Virus record (IMG/VR): IMGVR_UViG_3300017971_000190
Span: 1 to 64,000 of that record
Reading direction: 5' to 3' (one strand)
DNA length: 64,000 nucleotides
Shown: positions 1-12,426 of the stretch, piece by piece
Layout: every line of letters starts with the position of its first letter
Numbering within the stretch: position 1 is the first letter of the stretch
The notes under the pieces: model-generated
What the model saw: the letters and a program-made list of their open reading frames with translations, nothing else
Told to the model about the DNA's origin: nothing
Database searches by the model: none
Made by a program: the position numbers and the translations under genes

Positions 1-212
1 ACAACTGAAATGTAATTGATGTTTGCCTTTGATATGGCTGAGGCCTACGTTGAGTAGGAGAGTTCTACCGGTGGGGTCGGGTACCGGGTAGACAACTGAA
101 ATGTAATTGATGTTTGCCTTTGATATGGCTGAGGCCTACGTTGAGTAGGAGAGTTCTACCGGTGGGGTCGGGTACCGGGTAGACAACTGAAATGTAATCG
201 ATGTTTGCCTTT
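1..212 (+). repeat. 91-bp tandem repeat, 2 full copies plus a 30-bp partial copy
   Basis: 1-91 equals 92-182; 183-212 repeats the first 30 nt with one mismatch; the unit contains hairpins cctac/gtagg and tctacc..ggtaga. Confidence 0.9.
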
Positions 213-213
213 C

Positions 214-333
214 GTGGGTTTACACAGACTGTGGCTCGCAGAATCTGGGGAAGTAATTGGCGGTGAAGGAAGAAAATGAGCTTGGGGCATCTGGTGAAAC
301 ATCCAGACCGACTTTAACTGCCCGCCAACCCAC
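214..333 (+). ncRNA. Unidentified ~120-nt structured RNA, copy 1 (family A)
   Basis: Closed by gtggg/cccac; shares cagactgtggctcgcagaatctg and other blocks with 1307-1426; compensatory helix ttggcgg/ccgccaa. Confidence 0.75.
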
Positions 334-341
334 ATAATTTT

Positions 342-432
342 TGAGGGGCTGATGACGGTCAGAGATTGCGACTTTAAACCACAAGTCGCTAGAATTAATA
401 ACTGTGGGTTCGAGTCCCACCCCCTCGTTCCA
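342..432 (+). tRNA. Aberrant tRNA-like RNA (10-nt anticodon-position loop containing CTTTAAA)
   Basis: Acceptor tgagggg/cccctcg, T-arm gtggg-TTCGAGT-cccac, encoded CCA; helix gcgact/agtcgc has a 10-nt loop. Confidence 0.5.
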
Positions 433-716
433 GCAAGTTCCTAGAACATCTAAGAAGCTGTGATTGTATTGGGTCAGTGGCCTGTGCAGTACACAGTGGA
501 GACGGTTCGTTTAAGGAACGAGCTGCCTTTAGTCGAGATCCCGCGTTGGCGACTAGAGGGTTGGCAGTACCAATGCAGGGGTGCGAGGTGGGTAAGTCGG
601 TCTGGTAGATTTTACCTGTTTGTAATCCAGCGACACCACTTCAATAAATGGGACTAACAGGTCTCAACCATCTTTCGTTGTCACAAGTCGGTTGAGTATT
701 CACAAGATGACAACTA

Positions 717-781
717 GGAGTGAGGACACTAGCTTGAGTGCTTCAACGGTTTCGGCTCAAGTCCATAGCCCTTCTCCGAAA
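717..781 (+). ncRNA. Stem-loop/pseudoknot element (cttgag..ctcaag family)
   Basis: Stem 733-738/756-761; loop tttcgg complementary to downstream ccgaaa 776-781. Confidence 0.4.
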
Positions 782-966
782 AATTGATTGAAAACCGTTT
801 ACGCCTACACGGAGTTGGGGGTTCTACAGTTGTAGGAAGAGCTTAAAAACCCAAAGTAACAGGTGGGGCTACCGGGATGTATCTTTCCCTTTCAGTGTAA
901 GCCTGTTGCGGTAGGGAGAGTGGTGGACACGCTTGCCCCAACCCTCTACCCGAATTTTTCGTTTTT

Positions 967-1233
967 GGTAAATGGAAGGTTGGCCTAAAAGCAGCCATCC
1001 TTTAAAGAGTGAGGCGAAGACCTGTTGCTCGGATTTTTGCTGTGAGAGGCTTGGGTACGGTTAATCTCACAGGTTCCACGCGAGTCAAAAACGTAAAGTC
1101 GCTTTTTACGTAAATAGATTTGGGAGTGGCTCTCCCTAGCGTGCTGAAACAGGAGTACTTTCGGTTAAGTGAGGAGGCACCCCGGAGACGGTAAGGCCGA
1201 ATCCCTCTTTGGCGTAGCAGCACACCATTTACC
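967..1233 (+). ncRNA. 23S rRNA GTPase-associated centre (H43-H44, L11-binding domain) mimic with a 201-nt insertion
   Basis: 975-1010 + 1212-1225 align without gaps to E. coli 23S 1055-1104 (GAAGGTTGGCCTAAAAGCAGCCATCCTTTAAAGAGT|GCGTAGCAGCACAC); closed by a 9-bp stem ggtaaatgg/ccatttacc. Confidence 0.85.
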
Positions 1234-1306
1234 TTTTTCAGCCCCGTACCAAGTGTCCTATGGAGTTCGGGTTTAAATACTCCTCTTGGTACGCATTTTC
1301 AACCTT

Positions 1307-1426
1307 GTGGGTGTACTCAGACTGTGGCTCGCAGAATCTGAGGCAGTAATTGGTAAGAGATGAAGCTAATGAGCTTGACACCTGTAAAATAAGTTGCAGG
1401 GTGACTAAAACTGCTTACCAGCCCAC
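1307..1426 (+). ncRNA. Unidentified ~120-nt structured RNA, copy 2 (family A)
   Basis: Paralog of 214-333; helix changed to tggtaag/cttacca; closed by gtggg/cccac and followed by a T-run. Confidence 0.75.
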
Positions 1427-1514
1427 ATTTTTTGAGTTGCCCCCTAAGCACTGGTCTAACGATCCTGCTTAGGTGATCGGGGAGTGGATGGTACCTGAAG
1501 CTCCCCACTTTTTT

Positions 1515-1601
1515 GGAAGATGAACGGGAAGGCCGGGCATTAGTGCACAGTGTCGTACCGGTTCGACTCCGGTTTGGAAATCCAAGTTCTTGGCATCTTC
1601 C
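1515..1601 (+). ncRNA. tRNA-like RNA with T-arm but rearranged architecture
   Basis: 8-bp closing stem ggaagatg/catcttcc; T-arm accgg-TTCGACT-ccggt followed by an extra hairpin ttgga/tccaa before the 3' strand. Confidence 0.5.
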
Positions 1602-1708
1602 TTGAAAAACCGCCAGAGGAATTACACGTTATAATCTGGCCTCTACAGAGAGTAAAAAATGTGAGGTTGTGAGTGCTTTTCCAAAAACTCTCACCCGACA
1701 TAAGTTGG

Positions 1709-1804
1709 ATTTAGTGTCTTGTGCAGTCATAGATGGGAGGCGTTGAACTCTGGTCACCAGGTTGGAGGGAGCCAACAGTGAAATACCATCCATTGGCATT
1801 AAAT
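1709..1804 (+). ncRNA. 23S rRNA L1 stalk (H76-H78) mimic
   Basis: TGTGCAGTCATAGATGGGAGGCGTTGAA...GGAGCCAACAGTGAAATACCATCC matches 23S ~2109-2179 (UGUGUAGGAUAGGUGGGAGGCUUUGAA...GGAGCCGACCUUGAAAUACCACCC); 10-bp H76-like stem atttagtgtc/ggcattaaat. Confidence 0.85.
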
Positions 1805-1982
1805 TGTATAAATACAACAATTTGTGTTGGGTAATTTTCAGTTGCAACCCCTGGGTTCTGAGGTATTTGCCGGTAGCCTGCAGAACAGGGAAGTCCCGTA
1901 GCCGGATGGGTTTGGTAGTAGAACCTCTGACCCTTTTAATTGAGTCAGTAGCTGTACACTAAGAAAAAACTACCACTTTTTC

Positions 1983-2050
1983 GGAGCCTGTAATTTAAAT
2001 GGAAAAAGAAGCGTTAGCCTATTTCTAGGCTCGAATCCTAGCAGGTTCCT
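1983..2050 (+). tRNA. Degenerate tRNA-like RNA (8-bp acceptor, CTCGAAT T-loop)
   Basis: ggagcctg/caggttcc plus ctagg-CTCGAAT-cctag; D and anticodon arms weak. Confidence 0.4.
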
Positions 2051-2192
2051 TAAAGGGTGTAGTCTCCCTCCTGGGGAAACATTTCCTGGGTTATTTGGCC
2101 ATAAAAGACTACAACGCAAATCGAAAGTGCTTGTTGAATTGATTTGTGTAATCCGAACAAGCAGTTGTGAGTGCTTCTATAAACTCTCATTT

Positions 2193-2296
2193 GTGAGGTT
2201 CCTGGTTGTCCAAGGATGTAAACAGGTGAGTGCTTGGGTGTGTATTCTCGCTCAAGACTGGGCAGGCGAATTGACGCTAGCGAAGCTTGGCCTCAC
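2193..2296 (+). ncRNA. Closed structured RNA
   Basis: gtgagg/cctcac closing stem, internal cttggg/ctcaag stem, followed by a T-run. Confidence 0.4.
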
Positions 2297-2304
2297 ATTT
2301 TTAA

Positions 2305-2414
2305 TCCCTATGATAGAGGATCTACTGATCATTCTAGAACGGTCGGTTGGCAGAAAAAGCTTGTTGGACCCAACTTGTTTTTCTGTTGTCCTGGTTCGAT
2401 CCCAGGATGGGGAA
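2305..2414 (+). tRNA. Aberrant tRNA-like RNA with a very long variable arm and TTCTAGAA loop
   Basis: Acceptor tccctat/atgggga; D-arm taga-gga-tcta; 6-bp stem ctgatc/ggtcgg with a 10-nt loop; variable arm cagaaaaa/tttttctg; T-arm cctgg-TTCGATC-ccagg. Confidence 0.55.
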
Positions 2415-2451
2415 CTAAAGCACTTGGTTGTGAGTGATTCCTAAAACTCTC

Positions 2452-2575
2452 GGTTGTTGGTATACCAGGGTACTAACAATCTTAACACCTGGAAAAGCGT
2501 TTTGGTAGTTATCGTCAATAAATTGCTCTACTTGAGTGACGCCGGGCTCTCCTCAAGTGGTAAAACCCGGCAACC
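2452..2575 (+). ncRNA. Structured RNA with H-type pseudoknot
   Basis: ggttg/caacc ends; stem cttgag 2531/ctcaag 2552; loop gccggg 2541 pairs with cccggc 2566. Confidence 0.55.
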
Positions 2576-2587
2576 TTTTTATTTTTC

Positions 2588-2616
2588 TTGACTTCCTTCT
2601 TTTAGCACAGCATAAT
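2588..2616 (+). promoter_or_regulatory. Sigma70-like promoter
   Basis: TTGACT-17-CATAAT upstream of the ORF at 2649. Confidence 0.55.
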
Positions 2617-2648
2617 AATTGGTGTTAAACAGCTAAAAGGAGTCACAA

Positions 2649-3140
2649 ATGGTGCAGCAACACAAAATCCGAGAAGGCGTCCCCTACACCGATGGTAAAT
2701 CCATCAGAGTTATTGTTGATACTGAAGCTGGGAGTTTTGAGAACGGCACACCCGTGTATTATAGAACCACCCGAGACCTTTTCAAGGAAGTACACGAATG
2801 CTCTTTGGGAGCGTTTGCTCGGTGGGCAACACTGCAACACGAAGAGCTGTCAGATCAAATCGTACTGGCTATTCGCCCAAATAACGGAGCAGATGTTCTC
2901 CCAGACAATCTAGAAACCAGGGTGACAAGGATTTTGAAGACCGAGATTCTGAAAATTGAAGCCGGTTTGGGAACCGTTTCTTTTAATAAAAACGTAATTC
3001 CAGCCAAACTGCTGAGACAGTTGATTCAGGATTACGAAACACTCTACGGCTCAGAAACGCTTAATATCGAAGTAGTTTTCAGTCTTTTCCTTGACGGTGC
3101 GGTGGACCGCACGGAATTCCGGTTTAAGTCTGAACAATAA
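2649..3140 (+). CDS. Hypothetical protein (163 aa)
   Basis: ORF with SD aaaaggag. Confidence 0.75.
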   Translation: MVQQHKIREGVPYTDGKSIRVIVDTEAGSFENGTPVYYRTTRDLFKEVHECSLGAFARWATLQHEELSDQIVLAIRPNNGADVLPDNLETRVTRILKTEILKIEAGLGTVSFNKNVIPAKLLRQLIQDYETLYGSETLNIEVVFSLFLDGAVDRTEFRFKSEQ

Positions 3141-3230
3141 AGGGAGTTCGAGCTAGCGCTTCTTCCTGAGGGGCTTTGGTCCTGAAAATTCTAGCACACA
3201 CACGCTTTTATCAAGAAAGGAGATAGGATT

Positions 3231-3266
3231 ATGAAGCGCATTCCTGTTAACCTAATCAACCTCTAA
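3231..3266 (+). CDS. Putative 11-aa mini-peptide MKRIPVNLINL
   Basis: Strong SD aaaggag upstream of ATG. Confidence 0.3.
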   Translation: MKRIPVNLINL

Positions 3267-3297
3267 CCCTCCCACTTAAAGCTGAGTTAGCACTCAG

Positions 3298-3368
3298 GTC
3301 CGGTTGGTGGACGTACCAGAGGAAGTATTCTGTGTTCGTTGGTACCGACACAGGGTATTAAACCGGAC
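3298..3368 (+). ncRNA. Closed structured RNA
   Basis: gtccggtt/aaccggac stem; internal tattctgtgt/acacagggta helix. Confidence 0.45.
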
Positions 3369-3372
3369 ATCT

Positions 3373-3444
3373 GGCCCCATCGTTCAATGGTTAGGACACA
3401 GGATTTTCATTCCTGAGATCGGGTTTCGACTACCCGTGGGGTCA
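3373..3444 (+). tRNA. tRNA-Glu(TTC)
   Basis: Cloverleaf; anticodon arm cagga-ttTTCat-tcctg; T-stem has T53-A61. Confidence 0.9.
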
Positions 3445-3474
3445 ATAAACTATTAAAAGAAAGGTCATACTACA

Positions 3475-3663
3475 ATGGTGGAAAAGGAAAACAGTTTCTA
3501 CAAAGAACAATTTTCTATTTTGCAAAGGCGTCTTCGTGGTTCCATAGAAGAAGCAAAGAAGGAAGGAGACACGAAGAGAGAGATTGCTCTTCTGAGGGTA
3601 GGTTGTGACGTTGCGAACATTTTGAAGGGTGTGAACATAAATTACAACCCTCCTGGTTACTAA
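3475..3663 (+). CDS. Hypothetical protein (62 aa)
   Basis: ORF with SD aaagg between tRNAs. Confidence 0.6.
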   Translation: MVEKENSFYKEQFSILQRRLRGSIEEAKKEGDTKREIALLRVGCDVANILKGVNINYNPPGY

Positions 3664-3670
3664 AAGTTTA

Positions 3671-3743
3671 GGGCTCGTCGTCTAATTGGTAAGGCTCCAA
3701 GCTCATAACTTGGTCATTCGGGTTTCGATCACCCGCGAGCCCA
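3671..3743 (+). tRNA. tRNA with CAT anticodon (Met or Ile2)
   Basis: Cloverleaf; ccaag-ctCATaa-cttgg; G1-C72 paired, so not an initiator; T53-A61. Confidence 0.88.
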
Positions 3744-3826
3744 CTATGTTACTGACTACCTGAGACCGCAGCTCAAAGGTTAGTAGCAGAACACCTCAAT
3801 TAAGTGACGGTAGAACACTGAGGTGT

Positions 3827-3988
3827 GTGCAAGCAGGTACTACCGGGAAACTATTTTCTACCCTGTAACCACGTAGTTCCGAGGAGCACAAAAGAATGAT
3901 CCACCTTTTGTCCCTACCTGGAACTTAGCGTAGTTTCCCGCGTCTTTGGCGAAAGCCGTACTGCGTTGAGGATCAAACCTGCTTGCAC
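3827..3988 (+). ncRNA. ~160-nt multi-helix structured RNA
   Basis: 12-bp closing stem gtgcaagcaggt/acctgcttgcac; nested cgggaaacta/tagtttcccg, agttcc/ggaact, acaaaag/cttttgt, ggc-GAAA-gcc. Confidence 0.65.
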
Positions 3989-4000
3989 TTTTTCTTTTTT

Positions 4001-4082
4001 GCCCACATGGTGGAACAGGTAGACACGCGAATTTTAGGTGTTCGTGGCTAACGCCGTGGGAGTTCGAGTCTCTCTGTGGGCA
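4001..4082 (+). tRNA. tRNA-Leu(TAG)
   Basis: Class II cloverleaf; cgaat-ttTAGgt-gttcg; variable arm; A73. Confidence 0.92.
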
Positions 4083-4217
4083 CTAGGTCATTCTAATTTT
4101 AAGTCCTGGTAATGGTGCTAGGCAAACGTGACAAGCTTTCCATCCTTCACGTTCGAGAAAAGTTAGAATGACCTTAAATTTGTTGGGAGTTTGAGCTAAA
4201 CAAAAGAGGTACTTAAA

Positions 4218-4550
4218 ATGATTTTCACCTATGAGATAAAACGTCACAGTGTGGATTTCCTTTTCGAGGACGGCAGCTTTCATTCAATAGTGGTGGGACA
4301 AGGGCCTGGTTACTGGTACCGAATCATTTCAAAATTGAGAGAGTTGGGAAAAGAGATAAATCCGGAAGACTTTGACCAGGGTATAGAACGTCTATACTAC
4401 GATTACGCCACCGAGGAACTGAGAGGAAAAACAGAAAAGCAGAAAGAATTGGGATACTTTACCTGTCCCCAGTGCAACGTGATTTATCCTTGTCGTTCTT
4501 TCAAATATCAAAATCCTTGCGACAACTGTCGTTATGTAAAAATTACCTAG
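4218..4550 (+). CDS. Hypothetical protein, C-terminal CxxC..CxxC Zn ribbon
   Basis: ORF with SD gaggt. Confidence 0.7.
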   Translation: MIFTYEIKRHSVDFLFEDGSFHSIVVGQGPGYWYRIISKLRELGKEINPEDFDQGIERLYYDYATEELRGKTEKQKELGYFTCPQCNVIYPCRSFKYQNPCDNCRYVKIT

Positions 4551-4639
4551 TCACTTCGTGGTTAGGAGTGGGGCAATGGAATTGAGAAACCCCCTAGAGG
4601 TTATTGGGCAAAAAAGAAAGCAGGAAAGATAGATTAATA

Positions 4640-4700
4640 GTTCACATGGTAGTTTAGGTACCAGCGGGAAACCGTGTAGGTTCGAGTCCTACTGTGGGCA
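4640..4700 (+). tRNA. D-armless 61-nt derivative of tRNA-Leu(TAG)
   Basis: Acceptor gttcaca/tgtgggc, TTTAGGT retained, variable hairpin gcgg/ccgt, T-arm gtagg-TTCGAGT-cctac; the 3' end matches that of 4001-4082. Confidence 0.65.
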
Positions 4701-4703
4701 CTA

Positions 4704-4874
4704 GTTGGTAGTTCTGGGAGACCTTGGTGAAACACTCCATGGGAACCCACGGTAAAAACGAGACGTGGTAGGTTGTGTAGGTAACTACAGAGCCCTTCTA
4801 TCTAGTTACTCCTTGAGGGTAACGGGGGTAGTCGGATCTTGTTTTTAGAAACAAGGCCCACCTGAACTACCAAC
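4704..4874 (+). ncRNA. ~170-nt structured RNA
   Basis: 11-bp closing stem gttggtagttc/gaactaccaac with several internal hairpins. Confidence 0.6.
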
Positions 4875-5059
4875 AACTTCTTCCTAAGCACTTCGTGTTT
4901 GGGAGTGGGGCACTGGCATTTTAAAGTCCAACTCCATGTGGTTAGGGCAAACCAGTTCAAGACTTGGGCCTTTTGGCTAGCCCAGATGTATTTCTGATTG
5001 CCGACAAGTTACAGGCTGGTTGATACCAATTACCACGAAAGAAAGAGCTAGCCACTATG

Positions 5060-5144
5060 GGAAGGATGACCGAGCGGCTGAAGGTACACGCCTGCTAAGC
5101 GTGCGTAGGGAAACCTACCGAGGGTTCGAATCCCTCTCCTTCCG
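5060..5144 (+). tRNA. tRNA-Ser(GCT)
   Basis: Class II cloverleaf; cacgc-ctGCTaa-gcgtg; G73. Confidence 0.95.
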
Positions 5145-5248
5145 ACGCAGTTGGCCCCGCTGCACATCCTATCGAGAATAATTACCACAGATGTGTGTAC
5201 ACAAAGATGCTAGGATCTTTATTTGTGGTGGTTATTCTAGGGGCAATT

Positions 5249-5378
5249 GGCAGAGTGGCGAAACGAAAAGAGGCCCATACTAGTTAACCTCTTTCTTTGG
5301 TAAACGCGCGGTAACTCCGTGATTGGTCAATCAGTTAACTGGTTCACTATCTTCCAGGTTCAAATCCTGGCTCTGTCA
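5249..5378 (+). tRNA. tRNA-like RNA with a hairpin inserted in the D-loop and a degenerate anticodon arm
   Basis: ggcagag/ctctgtc; Leu/Ser-type D-arm tggcgaaac..tggtaaacgc split by aaagagg/cctcttt; T-arm ccagg-TTCAAAT-cctgg. Confidence 0.55.
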
Positions 5379-5461
5379 AGATGCTATCGCATACACTGCC
5401 TTCAAAAAGTGTATTGACAAATTAAAAAATGTTGTCACAAGACTACTAGGAGGTATTAATC

Positions 5462-5632
5462 ATGGAAAGACTTATTTATCGCTTTATTCCTAACGTTGAG
5501 ACCTTAATTGAGCAATACGAGTTGGAAGGTTTCGAGGTGCGGGGATACAGTGAGTACAGTTCTGACGGGATTCCTAGGGTGGCTGAGATGGTCAAGTGGG
5601 TTTCTGATAAACCGTCTCAAGAAAAGGAATGA
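5462..5632 (+). CDS. Hypothetical protein (56 aa; below the ORF-track cutoff)
   Basis: SD aggaggt, ATG..TGA open frame. Confidence 0.65.
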   Translation: MERLIYRFIPNVETLIEQYELEGFEVRGYSEYSSDGIPRVAEMVKWVSDKPSQEKE

Positions 5633-5657
5633 TTTTTGATTTTCTTCTCTTTCTTTT

Positions 5658-5732
5658 CGGGGAATAACTCAGTCTGGTAGAGTGCCTGCTTTGGGAGCAG
5701 GAAGTTCGCAGGTTCGAATCCTGTTTCCCCGA
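5658..5732 (+). tRNA. tRNA-Pro(TGG)
   Basis: Cloverleaf; C1-G72; cctgc-ttTGGga-gcagg. Confidence 0.95.
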
Positions 5733-5798
5733 TTAAGTTTATTTTTCAAAGTACACGAAAAATAAACTACCTCACTGGTACAGAGGTTAAAGTACTGT

Positions 5799-5959
5799 GG
5801 ACAAGTGTTGTGCAGAGGGTAGCACAGAGAGTAAGCTAACGAAAAGCGAAACCTGCCGTGCGAGAAGAGCAGGTCCACGGTGTAATCGGAATGCCTCTAG
5901 TGTGGTGCACCACAGCTAGTTTTAATGCCAATGAGAGGTTCGATTCCTCTCCTTGTCCA
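5799..5959 (+). ncRNA. tRNA-like termini enclosing a ~125-nt pseudoknotted insert
   Basis: ggacaag/cttgtcc plus T-arm gagagg-TTCGATT-cctctc; acctgc/gcaggt stem whose loop ccgtg pairs with cacgg. Confidence 0.55.
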
Positions 5960-5981
5960 AATGTTGGGTTGGTACTTTACC

Positions 5982-6180
5982 AACGACAACAGCTTTCTTC
6001 GGGAGCCCGGAAGAAAGGCTTAACCAGCGCCAGTGAGCTTCAATGGGTCGTGCACACACCGCGTTGAAGATGACTCTGGGGTAGTAGGAAGGTGCACAGA
6101 ACGGCAAACTAGGCTTTTCCTAGGTTGGCTTCTAGGCACCGATCCCTCCTTCAGTGGTGTGTGGGGCTTGGTTGTTCGTT
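5982..6180 (+). ncRNA. ~200-nt structured RNA with GTGCAC loop
   Basis: acgacaac/gttgttcgt ends; agctttcttc/gaagaaaggct hairpin; cttcaa/ttgaag stem; gtgcac at 6050 and 6092. Confidence 0.5.
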
Positions 6181-6219
6181 CACACAGGGCTCAATTTTAA
6201 AAATTATTAAAGGTGAAAA

Positions 6220-6417
6220 ATGAAGCTAACTAAAAAACAAGAAAAATTGGTAAAAGAGGTTATTGGAGACGGCACCGATTTTCCAAAATTTACAAACGAC
6301 CCTTATGTTAATCACAGAGTAGACATGCTTGTTTGTGACTGTCCACCTTGGGAGGAGTTGAGTAAGGAAGAGCAAGATTTGTATTTTGAGGAAGTAGAAG
6401 CTTCTAAAATGGAATAA
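6220..6417 (+). CDS. Hypothetical protein (65 aa)
   Basis: ORF with SD aaggtg. Confidence 0.65.
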   Translation: MKLTKKQEKLVKEVIGDGTDFPKFTNDPYVNHRVDMLVCDCPPWEELSKEEQDLYFEEVEASKME

Positions 6418-6438
6418 TTATTAATAGTATTGTTTCTT

Positions 6439-6510
6439 TGAGGCGTAGGCAAACGGTAAGCCACGAATTTTTGGTGTTCGGCATTGGAGGTTCGAATCCT
6501 CCCGCCTCAA
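6439..6510 (+). tRNA. tRNA-Gln(TTG)
   Basis: Cloverleaf; T1-A72; cgaat-ttTTGgt-gttcg. Confidence 0.88.
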
Positions 6511-6512
6511 AA

Positions 6513-6662
6513 ATGAAAAAAGAAAAACCTTTGAAGGATTTACTGCCGAATCCATGTTGTTGCAGTTTTCCCATGGAACCATTGAAAGTAACAAAACCAC
6601 TTAGAGAAAAATTGTGGAAGTGTCTCAAGTGTGGTAAGTTGATCTATAAATACAAAAACTAG
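6513..6662 (+). CDS. Small Cys-rich hypothetical protein (49 aa)
   Basis: ATG after tRNA-Gln; CC..CxxC. Confidence 0.45.
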   Translation: MKKEKPLKDLLPNPCCCSFPMEPLKVTKPLREKLWKCLKCGKLIYKYKN

Positions 6663-6665
6663 TGC

Positions 6666-6755
6666 GGAGTGTATAGTGTTTAAATGGCAACACGGCTAGT
6701 GGCTAACGGGTCATACCTGCCAGGCAAAAGTGGGTTCAAATCCTGCAACACTCCA
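6666..6755 (+). tRNA. Degenerate tRNA-like RNA
   Basis: ggagtgt/acactcc, D-arm gtgtt/aacac, TTCAAAT loop; anticodon arm poorly paired. Confidence 0.4.
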
Positions 6756-6824
6756 TATAATGTTTAGCGAGAGACAAGCAGTTGGGCTCTCGTGGCGACT
6801 TTGTAGAGGGTGTACAATTTTTCT

Positions 6825-6897
6825 GGGCGATTAACTCAGTTGGCAGAGTGCAATCTTTACGCGGTTGAAGTCACAGGTTCAAACCCTGTATCGCCCA
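6825..6897 (+). tRNA. tRNA-Val(TAC)
   Basis: Cloverleaf; caatc-ttTACgc-ggttg. Confidence 0.9.
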
Positions 6898-6905
6898 AAA
6901 AGAAG

Positions 6906-6934
6906 TTGACTTTACCACTACTCTGTGTTAGCCT
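6906..6934 (+). promoter_or_regulatory. Sigma70-like promoter
   Basis: TTGACT-17-TAGCCT with TG upstream of the -10. Confidence 0.45.
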
Positions 6935-7072
6935 TTTCTTAATCCGTGAGAGATCAGGCTCAACTGCTCTCACGGGGTTGTCAACGGGGTGGGCCAATCC
7001 CCTGACGGCGGGAGCTGCGTTTCCTTTTGGAAGCAGTCTCCCGTTTTAATTTTAGAAAGGAAACAAAGCACC

Positions 7073-7273
7073 ATGGTAGAAGAAAAAGAAACCTACGAAG
7101 CTATCAATTTTGGTTGGGACGGTGATGATTTTGTAACCGAAGATGTTACAGGCAAAATTCGTCGCTATCACGGTGCCAAAATTACCGACGTTAAGCGAGA
7201 GTGTTCTGTGGAAGTTCAAGACGGTAAAGTGATTGGACACTTTTCGTTTCAATTACCGAAAAAGAAAGGCTAA
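7073..7273 (+). CDS. Hypothetical protein
   Basis: SD aaagg; start re-assigned to ATG 7073. Confidence 0.65.
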   Translation: MVEEKETYEAINFGWDGDDFVTEDVTGKIRRYHGAKITDVKRECSVEVQDGKVIGHFSFQLPKKKG

Positions 7274-7277
7274 GAGA

Positions 7278-7565
7278 ATGACTATGGTAAAAGAACACGA
7301 ACTTAAGTATGGGGTAGATGGTTGCCTCTTAACCTGGCAAAACCCTTTTCCTGAAGAAGTAACCTGTGCTTGTTGTGGAAAAGAAGGTGCACGTTTAGCT
7401 TTTGTTCTACAAGAATCAGGCAAAAAGGAGCACGCTTGTAATTTATATCAAAACGATCCGGATGGAGAGGGATTTTGGGTGCACGATTCAGCTGCTTTTG
7501 CAGTTTATTTGTGCAGAGATATTAATTGCCCTGAAAAAGCTACCGCTAAGTGGAATCAAGCTTAA
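7278..7565 (+). CDS. Hypothetical Cys-containing protein
   Basis: ORF directly after the previous gene. Confidence 0.65.
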   Translation: MTMVKEHELKYGVDGCLLTWQNPFPEEVTCACCGKEGARLAFVLQESGKKEHACNLYQNDPDGEGFWVHDSAAFAVYLCRDINCPEKATAKWNQA

Positions 7566-7574
7566 AATATTTTT

Positions 7575-7647
7575 GGGTCCTTAGCTCAGCTGGTAGAGCA
7601 CCGGACTTTTAATCCGTAGGTCTTCGGTTCAAACCCGAAAGGACTCA
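7575..7647 (+). tRNA. tRNA-Lys(TTT)
   Basis: Cloverleaf; ccgga-ctTTTaa-tccgt. Confidence 0.92.
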
Positions 7648-7699
7648 TTAGTTCACCCATCAGAATAGTAAGTTTTAAGGAGAAAGATCATGAAGAAGA

Positions 7700-8377
7700 T
7701 TGTGCCTTCAAATTGTTGTAAACAGAATCAAGTATTTAAACTTAAACGAAAGAAGAACTGTTTTGAAAACATACCCAAGTATGGTTTATCCTCCCTTTGG
7801 AGGATTGAAGGAGTACCTTCACACCTTTGCTAAGTTGGACGGCAGCAATCTCAGATTTGAATGGAGCAAGAAAAAAGGTTGGTACAAAGTTGGAACCCGG
7901 CATCGTCTTGTAGACGAAAGTGATTCTATTTTTGGAAAAGCTCCCCTTATTTTTCAAGAAACTTTGGCTGACCAGTGCGAGAAAATTTGTAGAGATAATC
8001 GTTGGCAGAGAGCTGTGATTTTCTGCGAGTACTATGGACCACAAAGCTTTGCTGGCCTGCATGAAATTGGAGGTACGATGACGCTAACGGTTATAGACGT
8101 AGCTCCTTACAAAAAAGGCATTTTACCACCTACTGATTTTCTAAAACTGTTTGGAGAATTAGGGCCGCATTACCTGGGATACTTGAAGTGGAATTTTAAT
8201 TTCATAAATCGAGTTCATCAGGGTTTAGAGCCTGAAGCTAGTTTTGAAGGAGTAGTTGGTAAAGCTAAAGGGAAAGGAAATACACTACTTCTCTACAAAA
8301 CCAAAACTCAAGCCTGGAAAGATGAAGTTAAAAAACGATACAGTAAGAAGGAAGCAGAAAAAATAATTCATAGCTAA
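7700..8377 (+). CDS. ATP-dependent RNA ligase (Rnl2-like nucleotidyltransferase)
   Basis: Motifs KLDGSN (I), FCEYYG (III), FEGVV (IV), YKTK (V). Confidence 0.75.
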   Translation: MCLQIVVNRIKYLNLNERRTVLKTYPSMVYPPFGGLKEYLHTFAKLDGSNLRFEWSKKKGWYKVGTRHRLVDESDSIFGKAPLIFQETLADQCEKICRDNRWQRAVIFCEYYGPQSFAGLHEIGGTMTLTVIDVAPYKKGILPPTDFLKLFGELGPHYLGYLKWNFNFINRVHQGLEPEASFEGVVGKAKGKGNTLLLYKTKTQAWKDEVKKRYSKKEAEKIIHS

Positions 8378-8414
8378 GGTAAACATCGATTAACTTTTCA
8401 GAAAGGAAAGCCCT

Positions 8415-8651
8415 ATGTCTATTGTGCGCAAAGCCACTGTTAAGGGTGAAGTGGAAACACCCGCGTGTGAAAAGTGTGGAGAACCCCTAAAGCTGGGTAC
8501 ACGAAAACCCGTTTTTAACCCTTTTCACGAGGGAGCCAAAAAACTAGGCAACGGGTTAATTTGTGAGACCCCCGTTGCTCATGATTATTGGTTTTCCCCT
8601 TGTTCGCATTGCACACCTCCTCATGTAGTAATTAGAAAATTGGTATGCTGA
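8415..8651 (+). CDS. Hypothetical Zn-binding protein
   Basis: CxxC..CxxC; SD. Confidence 0.6.
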   Translation: MSIVRKATVKGEVETPACEKCGEPLKLGTRKPVFNPFHEGAKKLGNGLICETPVAHDYWFSPCSHCTPPHVVIRKLVC

Positions 8652-8652
8652 T

Positions 8653-8946
8653 TTGTCTTCCCGCCGCACCACCAAAAAAGAAAAACATCAGGCCATTTTT
8701 CTTGGTCTCTACACCAATGAAACTGGTTCTGATGTTGTCTACGTTTGGGAAGTTTGTAACGATCTCAAACCTGTTAAAGATTTTGCTGTTTGCTACACCC
8801 CTATTGTTAAAAATGGTAAGATGCTTCGTGGTACTTTTGAACGCATAGCTGATTGGAAAGGGTTTCCTTATTACGGCGGTCAGGAAGAATTTCTAAAACA
8901 TTTTCCTCATAGAGTGGAAAAAATTAAAATAGAGTTTGAGGAGTAG
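8653..8946 (+). CDS. Hypothetical protein, GLYT..G..VYV domain family
   Basis: Similar to both halves of 10125-10562. Confidence 0.65.
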   Translation: MSSRRTTKKEKHQAIFLGLYTNETGSDVVYVWEVCNDLKPVKDFAVCYTPIVKNGKMLRGTFERIADWKGFPYYGGQEEFLKHFPHRVEKIKIEFEE

Positions 8947-8951
8947 TTGTT

Positions 8952-9395
8952 TTGGCTCATCAATTAAATTGGCCTAGTATCAAGTATTTTCTTAAAGATT
9001 ACCTACTAGCTTTGGTCTACGAAGACTACAAACGGTGGCCTTATTGTTGTCAGGGTTTTCTTAAAAAAGAAAGCTACAGTGACTTTTTTTCTGGATTCAA
9101 GACTATTCTAACTAAAGGCTACGTGCCTTATGAAATTAGTGATCTTTGTGATCATCTTGCTCCTTTAATTCTTCCACGTCTCCAACGATTCAGAAAAGTT
9201 GTCTACAGTCATCCGGCTGATATGACTTTCGAAGAGTGGGAAGAAAAATTGGACAAAATGCTCTTTTCTTTTCAATTTGTTGTAGATAGAAGAGGCGATG
9301 ATGTTGGAGCTGACGACGAGAGTACGGCTACGCACAGTCAAGTAGAAGAAGGTTTTCAACTTTTTGGTGCTTATTTTCGCCACCTTTGGCTTTGA
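8952..9395 (+). CDS. Hypothetical protein
   Basis: 147-aa ORF in gene string. Confidence 0.65.
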   Translation: MAHQLNWPSIKYFLKDYLLALVYEDYKRWPYCCQGFLKKESYSDFFSGFKTILTKGYVPYEISDLCDHLAPLILPRLQRFRKVVYSHPADMTFEEWEEKLDKMLFSFQFVVDRRGDDVGADDESTATHSQVEEGFQLFGAYFRHLWL

Positions 9396-11303: not shown

Positions 11304-11627
11304 GTGTGTTATTTTCAGGACATTGCTGTAAAAAAAGTTGTAGTAGAAGTCATTTCCGAGCTGGTGGGAAAGCGTAAGCGCTTCACCGGTTGGGAAGTGA
11401 ATCAAAAATTACAAAACCGCAAAGGCTTTGCTCACCTTCCCCCACCCTGGCAGATCAGCTCCTATGTACGGGAACTGTTTAATGGGCATAACAGTGCTTT
11501 TTCAGGTTATGCCTGTTATCCAGTTGATGGAGGCCCCTTGCTCTATTTCCCAATTCCGTACTATGTGAGAAATCATGTCGAAAAAATCCAAAAAGAAATC
11601 CAAACGGAAGGCCAAACCGAAAAGTAA
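11304..11627 (+). CDS. Hypothetical protein
   Basis: SD aaagg, GTG start. Confidence 0.6.
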   Translation: MCYFQDIAVKKVVVEVISELVGKRKRFTGWEVNQKLQNRKGFAHLPPPWQISSYVRELFNGHNSAFSGYACYPVDGGPLLYFPIPYYVRNHVEKIQKEIQTEGQTEK

Positions 11628-12426
11628 CCCTTCTGTTTCGATGCCCAGTGTTCAGGAACTTTTTGGTTCCAGTTGTCGTTATCGCCTTAGCAGTTCTTTT
11701 CGTGGACCTCAATTAGAAGGTTACGAATTCTTATGTGCTTTCGAAAACAAAGTACACTCTTACCACACCCCCACAATGCAGAAGCTTGGCAATATTAAAC
11801 AAGCTTGGCATGGTACCAATAAGGCTGCACTTAAAAGCATTGCTGTGGATGGATTACTCACGCCTTTTCAGCGTCGAAAGCGAGATCGCTGGACTAGCAT
11901 ACACGGTATGTTTGGACCAGGAATTTATTTAGCTCCTAACATTGAAAAAGCGGCTATGTTCGCATGGCAGCATAAGCATTTGAAGTTTGTTCTTCAATGC
12001 TATGTTGCTTTGGGAAAACCTCATTTTGCTACTCAAACAGGAAACTATTACGAAACAGCTGAAATGGAAGACAAGCATAGTGTCATAGGTGGAAGAGGAT
12101 CACTGACTGGAGCTTGGGGTGGTAGACTCTTAAACGAAGAGTGGGTAATTTTCGATAATCAACAAGCTACTGTAGACATGGTACTCGTGTACAGATGCGT
12201 GGAAACTCCTAAGGCTACCCCATTTCGAGGCTCGATTGGACGACGATTTTATAACAGTAGTAGAGAACCACAAGGTGTTGTTCGTTACCACCCTTGCAAA
12301 CGAAATGGCAAGCTTTGTCGCAATGCTTTTGGCTCTGGTGGCTGTGTGGAAAAAGGTATAACTACTGGAGCGAGTGCCTTTTCAGATTACTGCAGAGATT
12401 ATCAAGTATCCTTGATTCACAAATAA
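11575..12426 (+). CDS. PARP-like (H-Y-E class) ADP-ribosyltransferase domain protein
   Basis: WHGT, GMFGPGIYLA, VALGK, NEEWVIF motifs. Confidence 0.8.
   Translation: MSKKSKKKSKRKAKPKSNPSVSMPSVQELFGSSCRYRLSSSFRGPQLEGYEFLCAFENKVHSYHTPTMQKLGNIKQAWHGTNKAALKSIAVDGLLTPFQRRKRDRWTSIHGMFGPGIYLAPNIEKAAMFAWQHKHLKFVLQCYVALGKPHFATQTGNYYETAEMEDKHSVIGGRGSLTGAWGGRLLNEEWVIFDNQQATVDMVLVYRCVETPKATPFRGSIGRRFYNSSREPQGVVRYHPCKRNGKLCRNAFGSGGCVEKGITTGASAFSDYCRDYQVSLIHK

What the first reader, a model, noticed from the sequence alone, without database searches (positions are those of the whole stretch)
214..1426. Novel ~120-nt RNA family present twice with covariation and a probable pseudoknot
Copies 214-333 and 1307-1426 share cagactgtggctcgcagaatctg, agtaattgg, tgaag, atgagcttg and gact..aactgc. 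Helices are swapped compensatorily (ttggcgg/ccgccaa versus tggtaag/cttacca), and the distal hairpin is variable. gcagt/actgc crosses that helix, which implies a pseudoknot. I do not recognise it as any known riboswitch or ribozyme.
Basis: seen in the sequence. Interest (0 to 1): 0.65.

Follow-up and report, generated by a model that had tools for sequence, protein, structure and literature searches.

The report
Orphan 120-nt phage RNA pair
Two diverged copies of a 120-base element that looks like a folded small RNA sit in the tRNA/RNA-gene island of an uncultivated jumbo phage; they match no known RNA family, but no copy was found in any other genome, so both the fold and the function rest on thin evidence.

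Summary
Window 214-333 and 1307-1426 are two ungapped 120-nt paralogues with 85 of 120 positions identical.

**What supports a folded RNA**
- The 35 differences are clustered; a 23-nt hairpin is untouched (permutation p 0.004).
- Three adjacent base pairs of one helix are swapped compensatorily.
- A distal hairpin is kept although its sequence differs.

**What it is not**
- It matches no Rfam 15 family.
- It has no significant similarity to E. coli rRNA or to the phage T4 small RNAs rnaC and rnaD.

**Context**
- The window starts a 222-kb jumbo-phage record.
- The copies lie in an RNA-gene island of about 10 kb. The island holds tRNAs without encoded CCA, a tmRNA, an intron-bearing tRNA-Leu, and mimics of two 23S rRNA domains (the GTPase-associated centre and the L1 stalk).

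**Limits**
- The "family" is only these two copies.
- Six assemblies of the same phage are identical.
- Two related phages with a syntenic island, ten more distant jumbo phages, and pattern scans of IMG/VR, JGI metagenomes and GTDB genomes all gave nothing.
- The proposed pseudoknot is not supported: copy 1 carries an uncompensated mismatch in it.

**Reading**
Most likely these are plus-strand, independently folding small RNAs. They would be cut out of the island transcript like tRNAs, using an acceptor-like end helix, a discriminator A and U-rich spacers, and would act in trans. The function is unknown. Interest is moderate to low.

The parts
214..333 (+). Copy 1 (c1), 120 nt; A334 follows, like a tRNA discriminator base
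   Evidence: model R1, 144.7 bits
1307..1426 (+). Copy 2 (c2), 120 nt; A1427 follows, like a tRNA discriminator base
   Evidence: model R1, 142.2 bits
214..219 (+). c1 P1 5' strand (GUGGGU); pairs with 328-333. In c2: 1307-1312 with 1421-1426. The U6-A115 pair of c1 becomes U-G in c2, which favours the + strand.
225..247 (+). c1 P2 hairpin, 23 nt, identical in c2 (1318-1340): 7 pairs with an AA bulge around a UGGCUCG loop
   Evidence: 0 of 23 positions differ
248..257 (+). c1 J2/3, holding the invariant AGUAAU; in c2 1341-1350
258..263 (+). c1 P3 5' strand; pairs with 322-327. In c2: 1351-1357 with 1414-1420. Three compensatory pairs. P3 abuts P1 with no linker.
278..314 (+). c1 P4 arm (positions 65-101): an invariant base (GAG.CUU with GACU) and a variable distal hairpin. 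In c2: 1371-1407.
180..212 (+). 33-nt repeated element ending 1 nt before c1. Further copies at window 1-30 and 89-121, and at L264:4735 and 7440. It is found only in the RNA island and does not fit sigma-70 spacing. It may be a promoter or a leader.
338..342 (+). U-run spacer between c1 and the tRNA-like module at 343-426. The counterpart after c2 is 1428-1433.
   Evidence: 21 runs of five or more T in 1-7700 against 8.7 expected, many at module borders

Best explanation
c1 and c2 are two paralogous genes for a plus-strand structured small RNA of about 120 nt. They are carried in the RNA-gene island of an uncultivated jumbo phage.

**Fold.** A three-way junction:
- P1 joins the two ends.
- P2 is a 23-nt hairpin that does not vary between the copies.
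- P3 stacks directly on P1 and leads through an asymmetric internal loop into a long P4 arm whose tip is free to vary.

**How it is made (inferred, not shown).** The RNA is transcribed with its neighbours as a multi-gene precursor and released the way the tRNAs around it are released:
- RNase P-type cleavage 5' of G1. The P1+P3 stack of 12-13 bp has the position and length of a tRNA acceptor/T-stem stack.
- Cleavage or trimming in the U-rich spacer after the unpaired A that follows P1.

**How it acts (weakest step, inferred).** The product then acts in trans through its invariant surfaces: the P2 loop, the AGUAAU junction strand, the base of P4 and the AACUGC strand. The likeliest role is as a binding site or decoy for a host or phage protein of the translation or RNA-processing machinery. 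This fits the mimics of 23S rRNA protein-binding domains that lie a few hundred bases away in the same island.
For: **Real paralogues with selective-looking conservation**
- Ungapped 120-nt alignment, 35 differences.
- None of the differences falls in P2 (23 nt), the core of J2/3 or the base of P4.
- 16 of 25 fall in the P4 tip, 6 of 14 in the 5' internal-loop strand and 6 of 12 in P3, all six compensated.

**Plus strand**
- G-U pairs at 6-115 (c2) and at 70-97.
- The plus strand folds better than the minus strand: -36.1/-42.3 against -31.6/-32.0 kcal/mol.
- All genes and tRNAs are on the plus strand.

**Not coding**
- Small minus-strand ORFs overlap the copies in different frames.

**Same grammar as the tRNAs in the array**
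- None of the 9 tRNAs encodes CCA.
- Most have discriminator A and a T-rich 5' leader, as c1 and c2 do.
- Runs of T are enriched 2.4-fold and sit at module borders.

**Discrete cassette**
- Homology with the related phage L287 runs up to about 2-4 nt before G1 of c2 and then stops.

**Island context**
- tmRNA, intron-bearing tRNA-Leu, and 23S GAC and L1-stalk mimics.

**Precedent (established knowledge)**
- The phage T4 tRNA cluster carries two stable non-tRNA RNAs, rnaC (139 nt) and rnaD (119 nt).
Against: - There are only two sequences. Covariation is three adjacent pairs, and 76 of 500 shuffles reach the observed score.
- c1 folds no better than shuffled sequence (z -0.01); only c2 does (z -2.8).
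- No expression data: no RNA run holds the sequence.
- No orthologue in the syntenic islands of related phages or anywhere else searched. The element is therefore dispensable and young, or evolves fast.
- It has no T-loop or D-loop, so RNase P recognition is assumed, not shown.
- The identical blocks could partly reflect gene conversion between the copies rather than selection.
Confidence: 0.4

Rival explanations
1. Mimic of a host RNA domain. Like the neighbouring GAC and L1-stalk mimics, c1/c2 copy a protein-binding piece of host rRNA or another host RNA and titrate its partner. This overlaps with the last step of the best explanation but makes a stronger claim: there is a specific host template.
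For: Two modules of the same island are clear 23S rRNA mimics. Window 975-1011 matches E. coli 23S 1049-1084, and window 1697-1831 matches 23S 2103-2176 (Rfam LSU model 49.5 bits).
Against: - c1/c2 show no significant local similarity to E. coli 16S, 23S or 5S, while both positive controls scored far above shuffles.
- No rRNA model of Rfam matches c1/c2, even at E<=10 on 146 nt.
- Patterns taken from the invariant blocks gave either no match or only chance matches in one genome of each of 185,579 prokaryote species.
Confidence: 0.12
2. Cis-acting regulatory or attenuator element (riboswitch-like). A ligand- or protein-stabilised P1 followed by a U-run would terminate transcription before the downstream tRNA-like modules.
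For: - A junction closed by P1 is typical of aptamers.
- In c2 the U6 run starts one base after P1.
- The invariant junction strands could form a pocket.
Against: - In c1 four bases separate P1 from the U-run, and P1 encloses 108 nt, so neither copy fits an intrinsic terminator (one search lists none there).
- The same U-runs precede ordinary tRNAs of the array.
- What lies downstream is RNA genes rather than a regulated ORF.
- No Rfam riboswitch matches.
Confidence: 0.1
3. Decaying duplicate. A module was duplicated by the cassette shuffling that shapes this island. The conserved blocks are gene-conversion tracts, and there is no present function.
For: - Absent from the related islands.
- The island holds several other duplicated pieces, including truncated tRNA-like copies (families D3, D6, D9).
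- c1's fold is thermodynamically unremarkable.
Against: - Four separate conserved blocks alternate with near-saturated blocks and there are no indels at all. That needs several conversion tracts.
- The changes in P3 are all compensated, and a hairpin is re-made in the saturated P4 tip.
Confidence: 0.18
4. Self-cleaving or otherwise catalytic RNA that helps to process the array.
For: Compact junction fold with invariant junction strands, located between RNA genes. Small ribozymes are known next to phage tRNAs (my own knowledge, not tested here).
Against: - No hammerhead, HDV-like, twister, twister-sister, pistol, hatchet, hairpin or other ribozyme model matches, even at E<=10.
- The junction strands do not fit the hammerhead core (read directly from the sequence).
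- The one proposed pseudoknot is not conserved.
Confidence: 0.05

Closest known systems
Phage T4 species 1 and 2 RNAs (rnaC 139 nt, rnaD 119 nt)
   Same: Small, stable non-tRNA RNAs encoded inside a phage tRNA gene cluster, on the same strand as the tRNAs and directly abutting them. Similar size. Their function is still unknown (my own knowledge).
   Different: No sequence similarity (local alignment p 0.4-1.0) and different predicted folds. rnaC carries a T-arm; c1/c2 have none. This is an analogy of kind, not homology.
tRNA / tRNA-like structures, and non-tRNA RNase P substrates (4.5S and tmRNA precursors, phage P1 C4 RNA; my own knowledge)
   Same: An end-joining helix starting with G1-C, an unpaired A after it, no encoded CCA, U-rich leader and trailer. 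A second helix is stacked on the 3' side of the end helix, where a T-stem would be.
   Different: No T-loop, D-loop or anticodon arm. The tRNA model (RF00005) and ARAGORN do not match.
23S rRNA-domain mimics in the same island (GAC H43-H44 and L1 stalk)
   Same: Same island, same strand, similar module size, bounded by U-runs.
   Different: Those have clear rRNA templates, and the GAC mimic recurs in distant cultured phages. c1/c2 have neither.
Bacterial and phage Y RNAs (YrlA)
   Same: RNAs of about 100-130 nt with paired ends that mimic tRNA features. Some are phage-encoded (PMC4201824).
   Different: No Rfam Y RNA or YrlA match, no T-arm module, and no Ro60/TROVE gene in the 222-kb record.

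Membership tests
Any Rfam 15 family (riboswitches, ribozymes, sRNAs, rRNA, tRNA, tmRNA, Y RNA, SRP, 6S, RNase P, r-protein leaders) | Score at or above the family's gathering threshold, or at least a suggestive E-value | tested here: not met
   Nothing overlaps c1. c2 draws only four hits at chance level (E 7-10, 7-12 bits against cut-offs of 40-80).
tRNA | Cloverleaf with T-loop, D-loop and anticodon arm | tested here: not met
   ARAGORN and RF00005 do not call them. No GTTCRANYC-type T-loop can be read in the sequence.
tRNA-type processing substrate | Acceptor-like helix with G+1, an unpaired base after it, a coaxial helix of about 12 bp, and cleavage by RNase P | tested here: inconclusive
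   The sequence features are present. Cleavage cannot be tested with these tools.
5S rRNA (also 120 nt, three-way junction) | Helix II-III arm, then helix IV-V arm with loop E; match to RF00001 | tested here: not met
   No RF00001 match. Local alignment to E. coli 5S gives p 0.56-0.62. The arm proportions are reversed.
rRNA-domain mimic | Significant similarity to a 16S or 23S segment | tested here: not met
   best scores lie within the shuffle range for 16S and 5S. The single 13-nt hit of c2 to 23S only equals the best shuffle. Positive controls scored 47 and 58 against 28.
Y RNA / YrlA | Ro60-binding stem, tRNA-like module, and a Ro60 (TROVE) gene in the genome | tested here: not met
   No Rfam match. 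No TROVE match in the record, which is 63% complete.
Retron or other reverse-transcriptase-associated ncRNA | An adjacent reverse transcriptase gene | tested here: not met
   No RVT_1 match in the 222-kb record. No ORF of 120 aa or more within 1.2 kb.
T4 rnaC / rnaD | Sequence or structure homology | tested here: not met
   Only two paralogues. There are 3 compensatory pairs in P3; P1, P2 and the base of P4 never vary. No further homologue was found.
Pseudoknot 37-41 with 104-108 | The pairing is kept in all copies and is compatible with P3 | tested here: not met
   Position 38 is A in c1, opposite G107, with no compensation. In c2 the pairing appears as a nested alternative fold of equal energy (-39.9) in which P3 is not formed.

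The most novel reading that the evidence does not exclude
c1/c2 are the first members of a new class of phage small RNA. They would be released from tRNA-island transcripts by the tRNA-processing machinery and would work as a structured decoy or adaptor for a host translation, RNA-processing or anti-phage factor. They would be one tool in a wider, undescribed phage toolkit of 'translation-apparatus mimic' RNAs, which also includes the 23S GAC and L1-stalk mimics next to them.
Probability: 0.15. Interest if true: 0.7.

Novelty: new variant of a known kind. Interest (0 to 1): 0.38.

Why it matters
Large phages carry long tRNA arrays, and the sequence between the tRNAs is usually ignored. If c1/c2 are real stable RNAs, that "spacer" sequence holds fast-evolving, lineage-specific structured RNAs made by the tRNA-processing pathway. 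Phage T4's rnaC and rnaD have posed the same question for fifty years without an answer.

On its own, the pair is a two-member orphan with no handle on function, so its value is modest. The island as a whole makes a stronger case that phages deploy RNA mimics of the translation apparatus. It holds a tmRNA, an intron-bearing tRNA, rRNA-domain mimics shared with cultured Pseudomonas, Aeromonas and Xanthomonas phages, and cassette-like turnover of modules.

Tried and rejected
**Homologue hunt**
- The exact 23-mer of P2 found nothing in IMG/VR.
None of these loci resembled c1/c2 by nhmmer or BLAST.
- Tighter patterns gave the following:
  - JGI metagenomes: only the source contig.
  - GTDB genomes: none in one scan, 38 chance hits in the other.
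  - IMG/VR: none in one scan, 3 hits in the other.
  - All of these hits were rejected by model R1.
- An anchor pattern from the conserved hairpin upstream of c2 found nothing in IMG/VR.
- Model R1 gave only the two copies in the phage's own 222-kb record.
- R1 found nothing in ten jumbo-phage records with a related PolA-UDG polymerase. It also found nothing in 100 kb of the tRNA regions of G001 and G002 with filters off.
- R1 found nothing in relatives reached through neighbouring small ORFs: L269/L270, and L287-L292 with filters off.
- L293/L294 are too short to reach the island.
- Phage GenBank records by blastn: only chance hits at E 5.

**Expression**
- No RNA run holds the sequence. The holders are DNA contigs of sediment and seawater metagenomes.

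**A possible third, shortened copy**
- L264:5730-5810, in the 5' UTR of the 69-aa ORF, shares the 3' end AACUGCCC..CCAACCCAC.
- I rejected it. The score (26) barely exceeds background (20-24), and the shared motif is not kept in the orthologous UTRs of three relatives.

**Other ideas checked and dropped**
- Coding: no ORF frame is conserved between the copies.
- K-turn, C/D-box, loop-E, hammerhead core or SRP domain IV: read by eye, none fits both copies.
- The 33-nt upstream repeat as a genome-wide promoter: it occurs only in the island and does not fit sigma-70 spacing.

Full report
**1. What is there**

The window is the first 64 kb of a 221,679-bp IMG/VR virus record. The record is estimated 63% complete and equals JGI contig Ga0180438_10000059. 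All ORFs of any size run on the plus strand. They include a family A DNA polymerase fused to a uracil-DNA glycosylase domain, and the two subunits of a type II topoisomerase. This is an uncultivated jumbo phage. Bases 1-7700 are almost free of long ORFs and hold eight of the window's nine tRNA genes, none with an encoded CCA.

The two elements sit at 214-333 (c1) and 1307-1426 (c2). They align over exactly 120 nt without a gap, and 85 of 120 positions are identical. 'tgaag' is shared but shifted by 4 nt between the copies.

**2. Is it more than chance, and is it a folded RNA?**

The copies are clearly paralogous: BLAST E is 5e-12 for the first 47 nt alone.

The 35 differences are strongly clustered:

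| Region | Positions that differ |
|---|---|
| P2 hairpin | 0 of 23 |
| Base of the P4 arm | 1 of 12 |
| P1 | 1 of 12 |
| Middle of P3 | 6 of 12 |
| 5' strand of the internal loop | 6 of 14 |
| P4 tip | 16 of 25 |

The 23-nt identical run has a permutation p of 0.004.

All six P3 changes are compensatory: C-G, G-C, G-C become U-A, A-U, A-U. The P4 tip is close to saturated, yet it folds into a hairpin in both copies. Shuffle p is 0.07 for c1 and 0.002 for c2. There are no indels at all.

The plus strand is favoured by three things:
- G-U pairs at 6-115 (c2) and at 70-97.
- Better folding energies than the minus strand.
- The orientation of everything around it.

Small minus-strand ORFs overlap the copies, but in different frames, so the elements are not coding.

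The fold that suits both copies is as follows:
- P1: 1-6 with 115-120.
- P2: 12-34.
- P3: 45-50 with 109-114, abutting P1 directly.
- The extra hairpin 57-70 forms fully only in c2.

Limits of this evidence:
- With two sequences the formal covariation test is nearly powerless; 76 of 500 shuffles reach the observed score.
- c1 as a whole folds no better than shuffled sequence (z -0.01), whereas c2 does (z -2.8).

**3. The pseudoknot**

GCAGU (37-41) with ACUGC (104-108) exists in c2 only. In c1, position 38 is A opposite the unchanged G107, so the one variable position in the proposed helix breaks it without compensation. In c2 the pairing turns up as an equal-energy (-39.9 kcal/mol) nested alternative to P3. 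I do not consider the pseudoknot supported. A loop-to-strand contact between the P2 loop (GGCUC) and GAGCU (65-69) is possible on paper. Both sides are invariant, so it cannot be tested here.

**4. Known families**

- No Rfam 15 family matches. This holds at gathering thresholds on the whole window, at E<=10 on bases 1-9000, and at E<=10 on each 146-nt piece alone, where the filters are most permissive.
- ARAGORN calls no tRNA or tmRNA at either copy.
- Local alignment to E. coli 16S, 23S and 5S rRNA stays within the shuffle range. Two neighbouring modules used as positive controls score far above it.
- T4 rnaC and rnaD show no similarity.
- The 222-kb record has no Ro60/TROVE gene and no reverse transcriptase gene.

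**5. Homologues elsewhere**

None was found. The details are under Tried and rejected. In brief:
- The same phage appears in five further assemblies (JGI, ENA, Logan; sediment and seawater). They show zero differences over about 13 kb, so there is no population variation to exploit.
- Ten jumbo-phage records with a related polymerase (23-46% identity) lack the element, including 100 kb of tRNA-rich sequence searched with filters off.

The most telling case is a relative reached through a neighbouring 69-aa ORF (75% identical; locus L287). It has a syntenic RNA island with many shared modules but no c1 or c2 (filters off). Its homology with the window runs up to about 2-4 nt before G1 of c2, and unrelated sequence follows. 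So c2 behaves as a discrete cassette, and the island turns over module by module.

**6. Context**

Longer contigs of the same phage (L264, from a 298-kb contig) show that the RNA island runs for about 10.5 kb and begins 2.7 kb upstream of the window. It contains:
- a tmRNA (Rfam 123 bits; tag ANDNDVPMAVANAA);
- tRNA-Leu(CAA);
- a tRNA-Leu(UAA) that appears to be split by a group I intron (29 bits, below the cut-off of 50, plus tRNA halves read directly from the sequence);
- several T-arm-bearing tRNA-like modules that ARAGORN does not call;
- other duplicated modules;
- small ORFs with ribosome-binding sites.

It also holds two mimics of 23S rRNA protein-binding domains:
- Window 975-1011 matches H43-H44 of the GTPase-associated centre.
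- Window 1697-1831 matches the L1 stalk.

c1 begins 1 nt after a 33-nt element that is repeated only within the island. Runs of five or more T are enriched 2.4-fold and tend to sit at module borders, including just after c1 and c2.

**7. How it most likely works**

Shown:
- There are two diverged copies.
- The conservation pattern and compensated changes fit a plus-strand folded RNA.
- The ends (G1-C120 helix, unpaired A after it, no CCA, U-rich leader and trailer) follow the same grammar as the tRNAs of the array.

Inferred:
- The RNA is released from a multi-gene precursor by RNase P-type 5' cleavage. The P1+P3 stack of 12-13 bp stands where the acceptor/T-stem stack of a tRNA would be.
- The 3' end is made by cleavage or trimming in the U-rich spacer.
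- The product is a stable RNA of about 121 nt that acts in trans through its invariant P2 loop and junction strands, probably by binding a protein.

The decoy idea rests only on the neighbouring rRNA mimics. I put 0.4 on this overall reading. The rivals are a decaying duplicate (0.18), a mimic of a specific host RNA (0.12), a cis-regulatory element (0.10) and a ribozyme (0.05).

**8. Novelty and verdict**

The kind is known: a non-tRNA structured small RNA embedded in a phage tRNA cluster, as in T4. This sequence and fold match nothing described. The evidence for function is indirect, and the "family" has two members in one phage. Interest is 0.38.

The island as a whole deserves more attention than the pair itself. 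The GAC-mimic RNA is the main reason. It is shared with cultured Pseudomonas, Aeromonas and Xanthomonas phages, and I found no paper describing it.

No sequence was taken for human, and no reads tool was run on the window.

Noticed in passing
window 975-1230 (5' block 975-1020; 3' block about 1180-1230): An unannotated RNA module whose 5' block mimics 23S rRNA H43-H44, the GTPase-associated centre and L11/L10 binding site. It matches E. coli 23S 1049-1084 with local score 47 against a best shuffle of 28, and is 86-91% identical to E. coli 23S. It has a variable middle and a conserved 3' block ending ...GCACACCA. The same module occurs at 83-92% identity inside or beside the tRNA clusters of Pseudomonas phages Astolliot, pf16, UNO-G1W1 and Milchi and of Aeromonas phage 4_4572. 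In Xanthomonas phage XacN1 a 37-nt match lies next to a 2'-5' RNA ligase gene. It is also in the related record G002. It is not in Rfam, and I found no paper on it.
   Followed up: partly
window 1697-1831: A mimic of the 23S rRNA L1 stalk (H76-H78). Rfam LSU_rRNA_bacteria positions 2109-2265 score 49.5 bits, E 8e-13, just under the cut-off of 50. It matches E. coli 23S 2103-2176 with score 58 against 28 for shuffles. A weak c-di-GMP-II riboswitch hit at 1727-1796 (E 0.7) is most likely this same structure.
   Followed up: partly
L264:5028-5403, 6952-7030 and about 7040-7345 (same phage, 2.0-2.3 kb upstream of the window start): A phage-encoded tmRNA (Rfam 123 bits; tag ANDNDVPMAVANAA), tRNA-Leu(CAA), and a tRNA-Leu(UAA) that appears to be interrupted in the anticodon loop by a group I intron. 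The Intron_gpI match is 29 bits, E 2e-4, below the cut-off. The tRNA halves were read directly from the sequence.
   Followed up: partly
window 1-212; L264:7440-7565: The 91-nt tandem repeat at the window start consists of a 33-nt island-specific element plus a 61-nt unit. It has 2.3 copies in this contig but 1.3 in the ENA and JGI contigs of the same phage. Two Logan contigs break 45 nt before c1. The copy number is therefore variable, or repeat collapse and contig breaks at the repeat have distorted it.
   Followed up: partly
window 343-426, about 1515-1600, 4640-4701, about 5290-5375, about 5900-5960, 6665-6765: Modules with good T-arms (GGTTCGA-type loops) and end-joining stems that ARAGORN does not call as tRNAs. 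One (343-426; tRNA-Sec model 23 bits, E 0.6) has an 8-nt anticodon-type loop. One (4640-4701) is a shortened copy of the tRNA-Leu at 4001-4083.
   Followed up: no
window 1666-1696, 2164-2194, 2427-2457 (also 2227); 3861-3898, 4546-4583, 4883-4920: Two further small families of repeated, hairpin-forming elements in the island. One is GTGAGTGCTT...CTCTCA. The other is CCTAGTCACTTCGTGGTTAGGAGTGGGGCA-like (families D6 and D3).
   Followed up: no
window 11575-12426; L287:142-1422: A PARP-type ADP-ribosyltransferase domain protein lies just downstream of the island (Pfam PF00644, E 6e-13). The related phage L287 has an AcrVA2-like protein upstream of its island.
   Followed up: no
L287:9864-20210 compared with L264:4618-15133: The RNA islands of two related phages share many modules at 68-93% identity. 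Other modules are inserted, lost or moved, with sharp homology breakpoints at module borders. This suggests cassette-like evolution of the island.
   Followed up: partly
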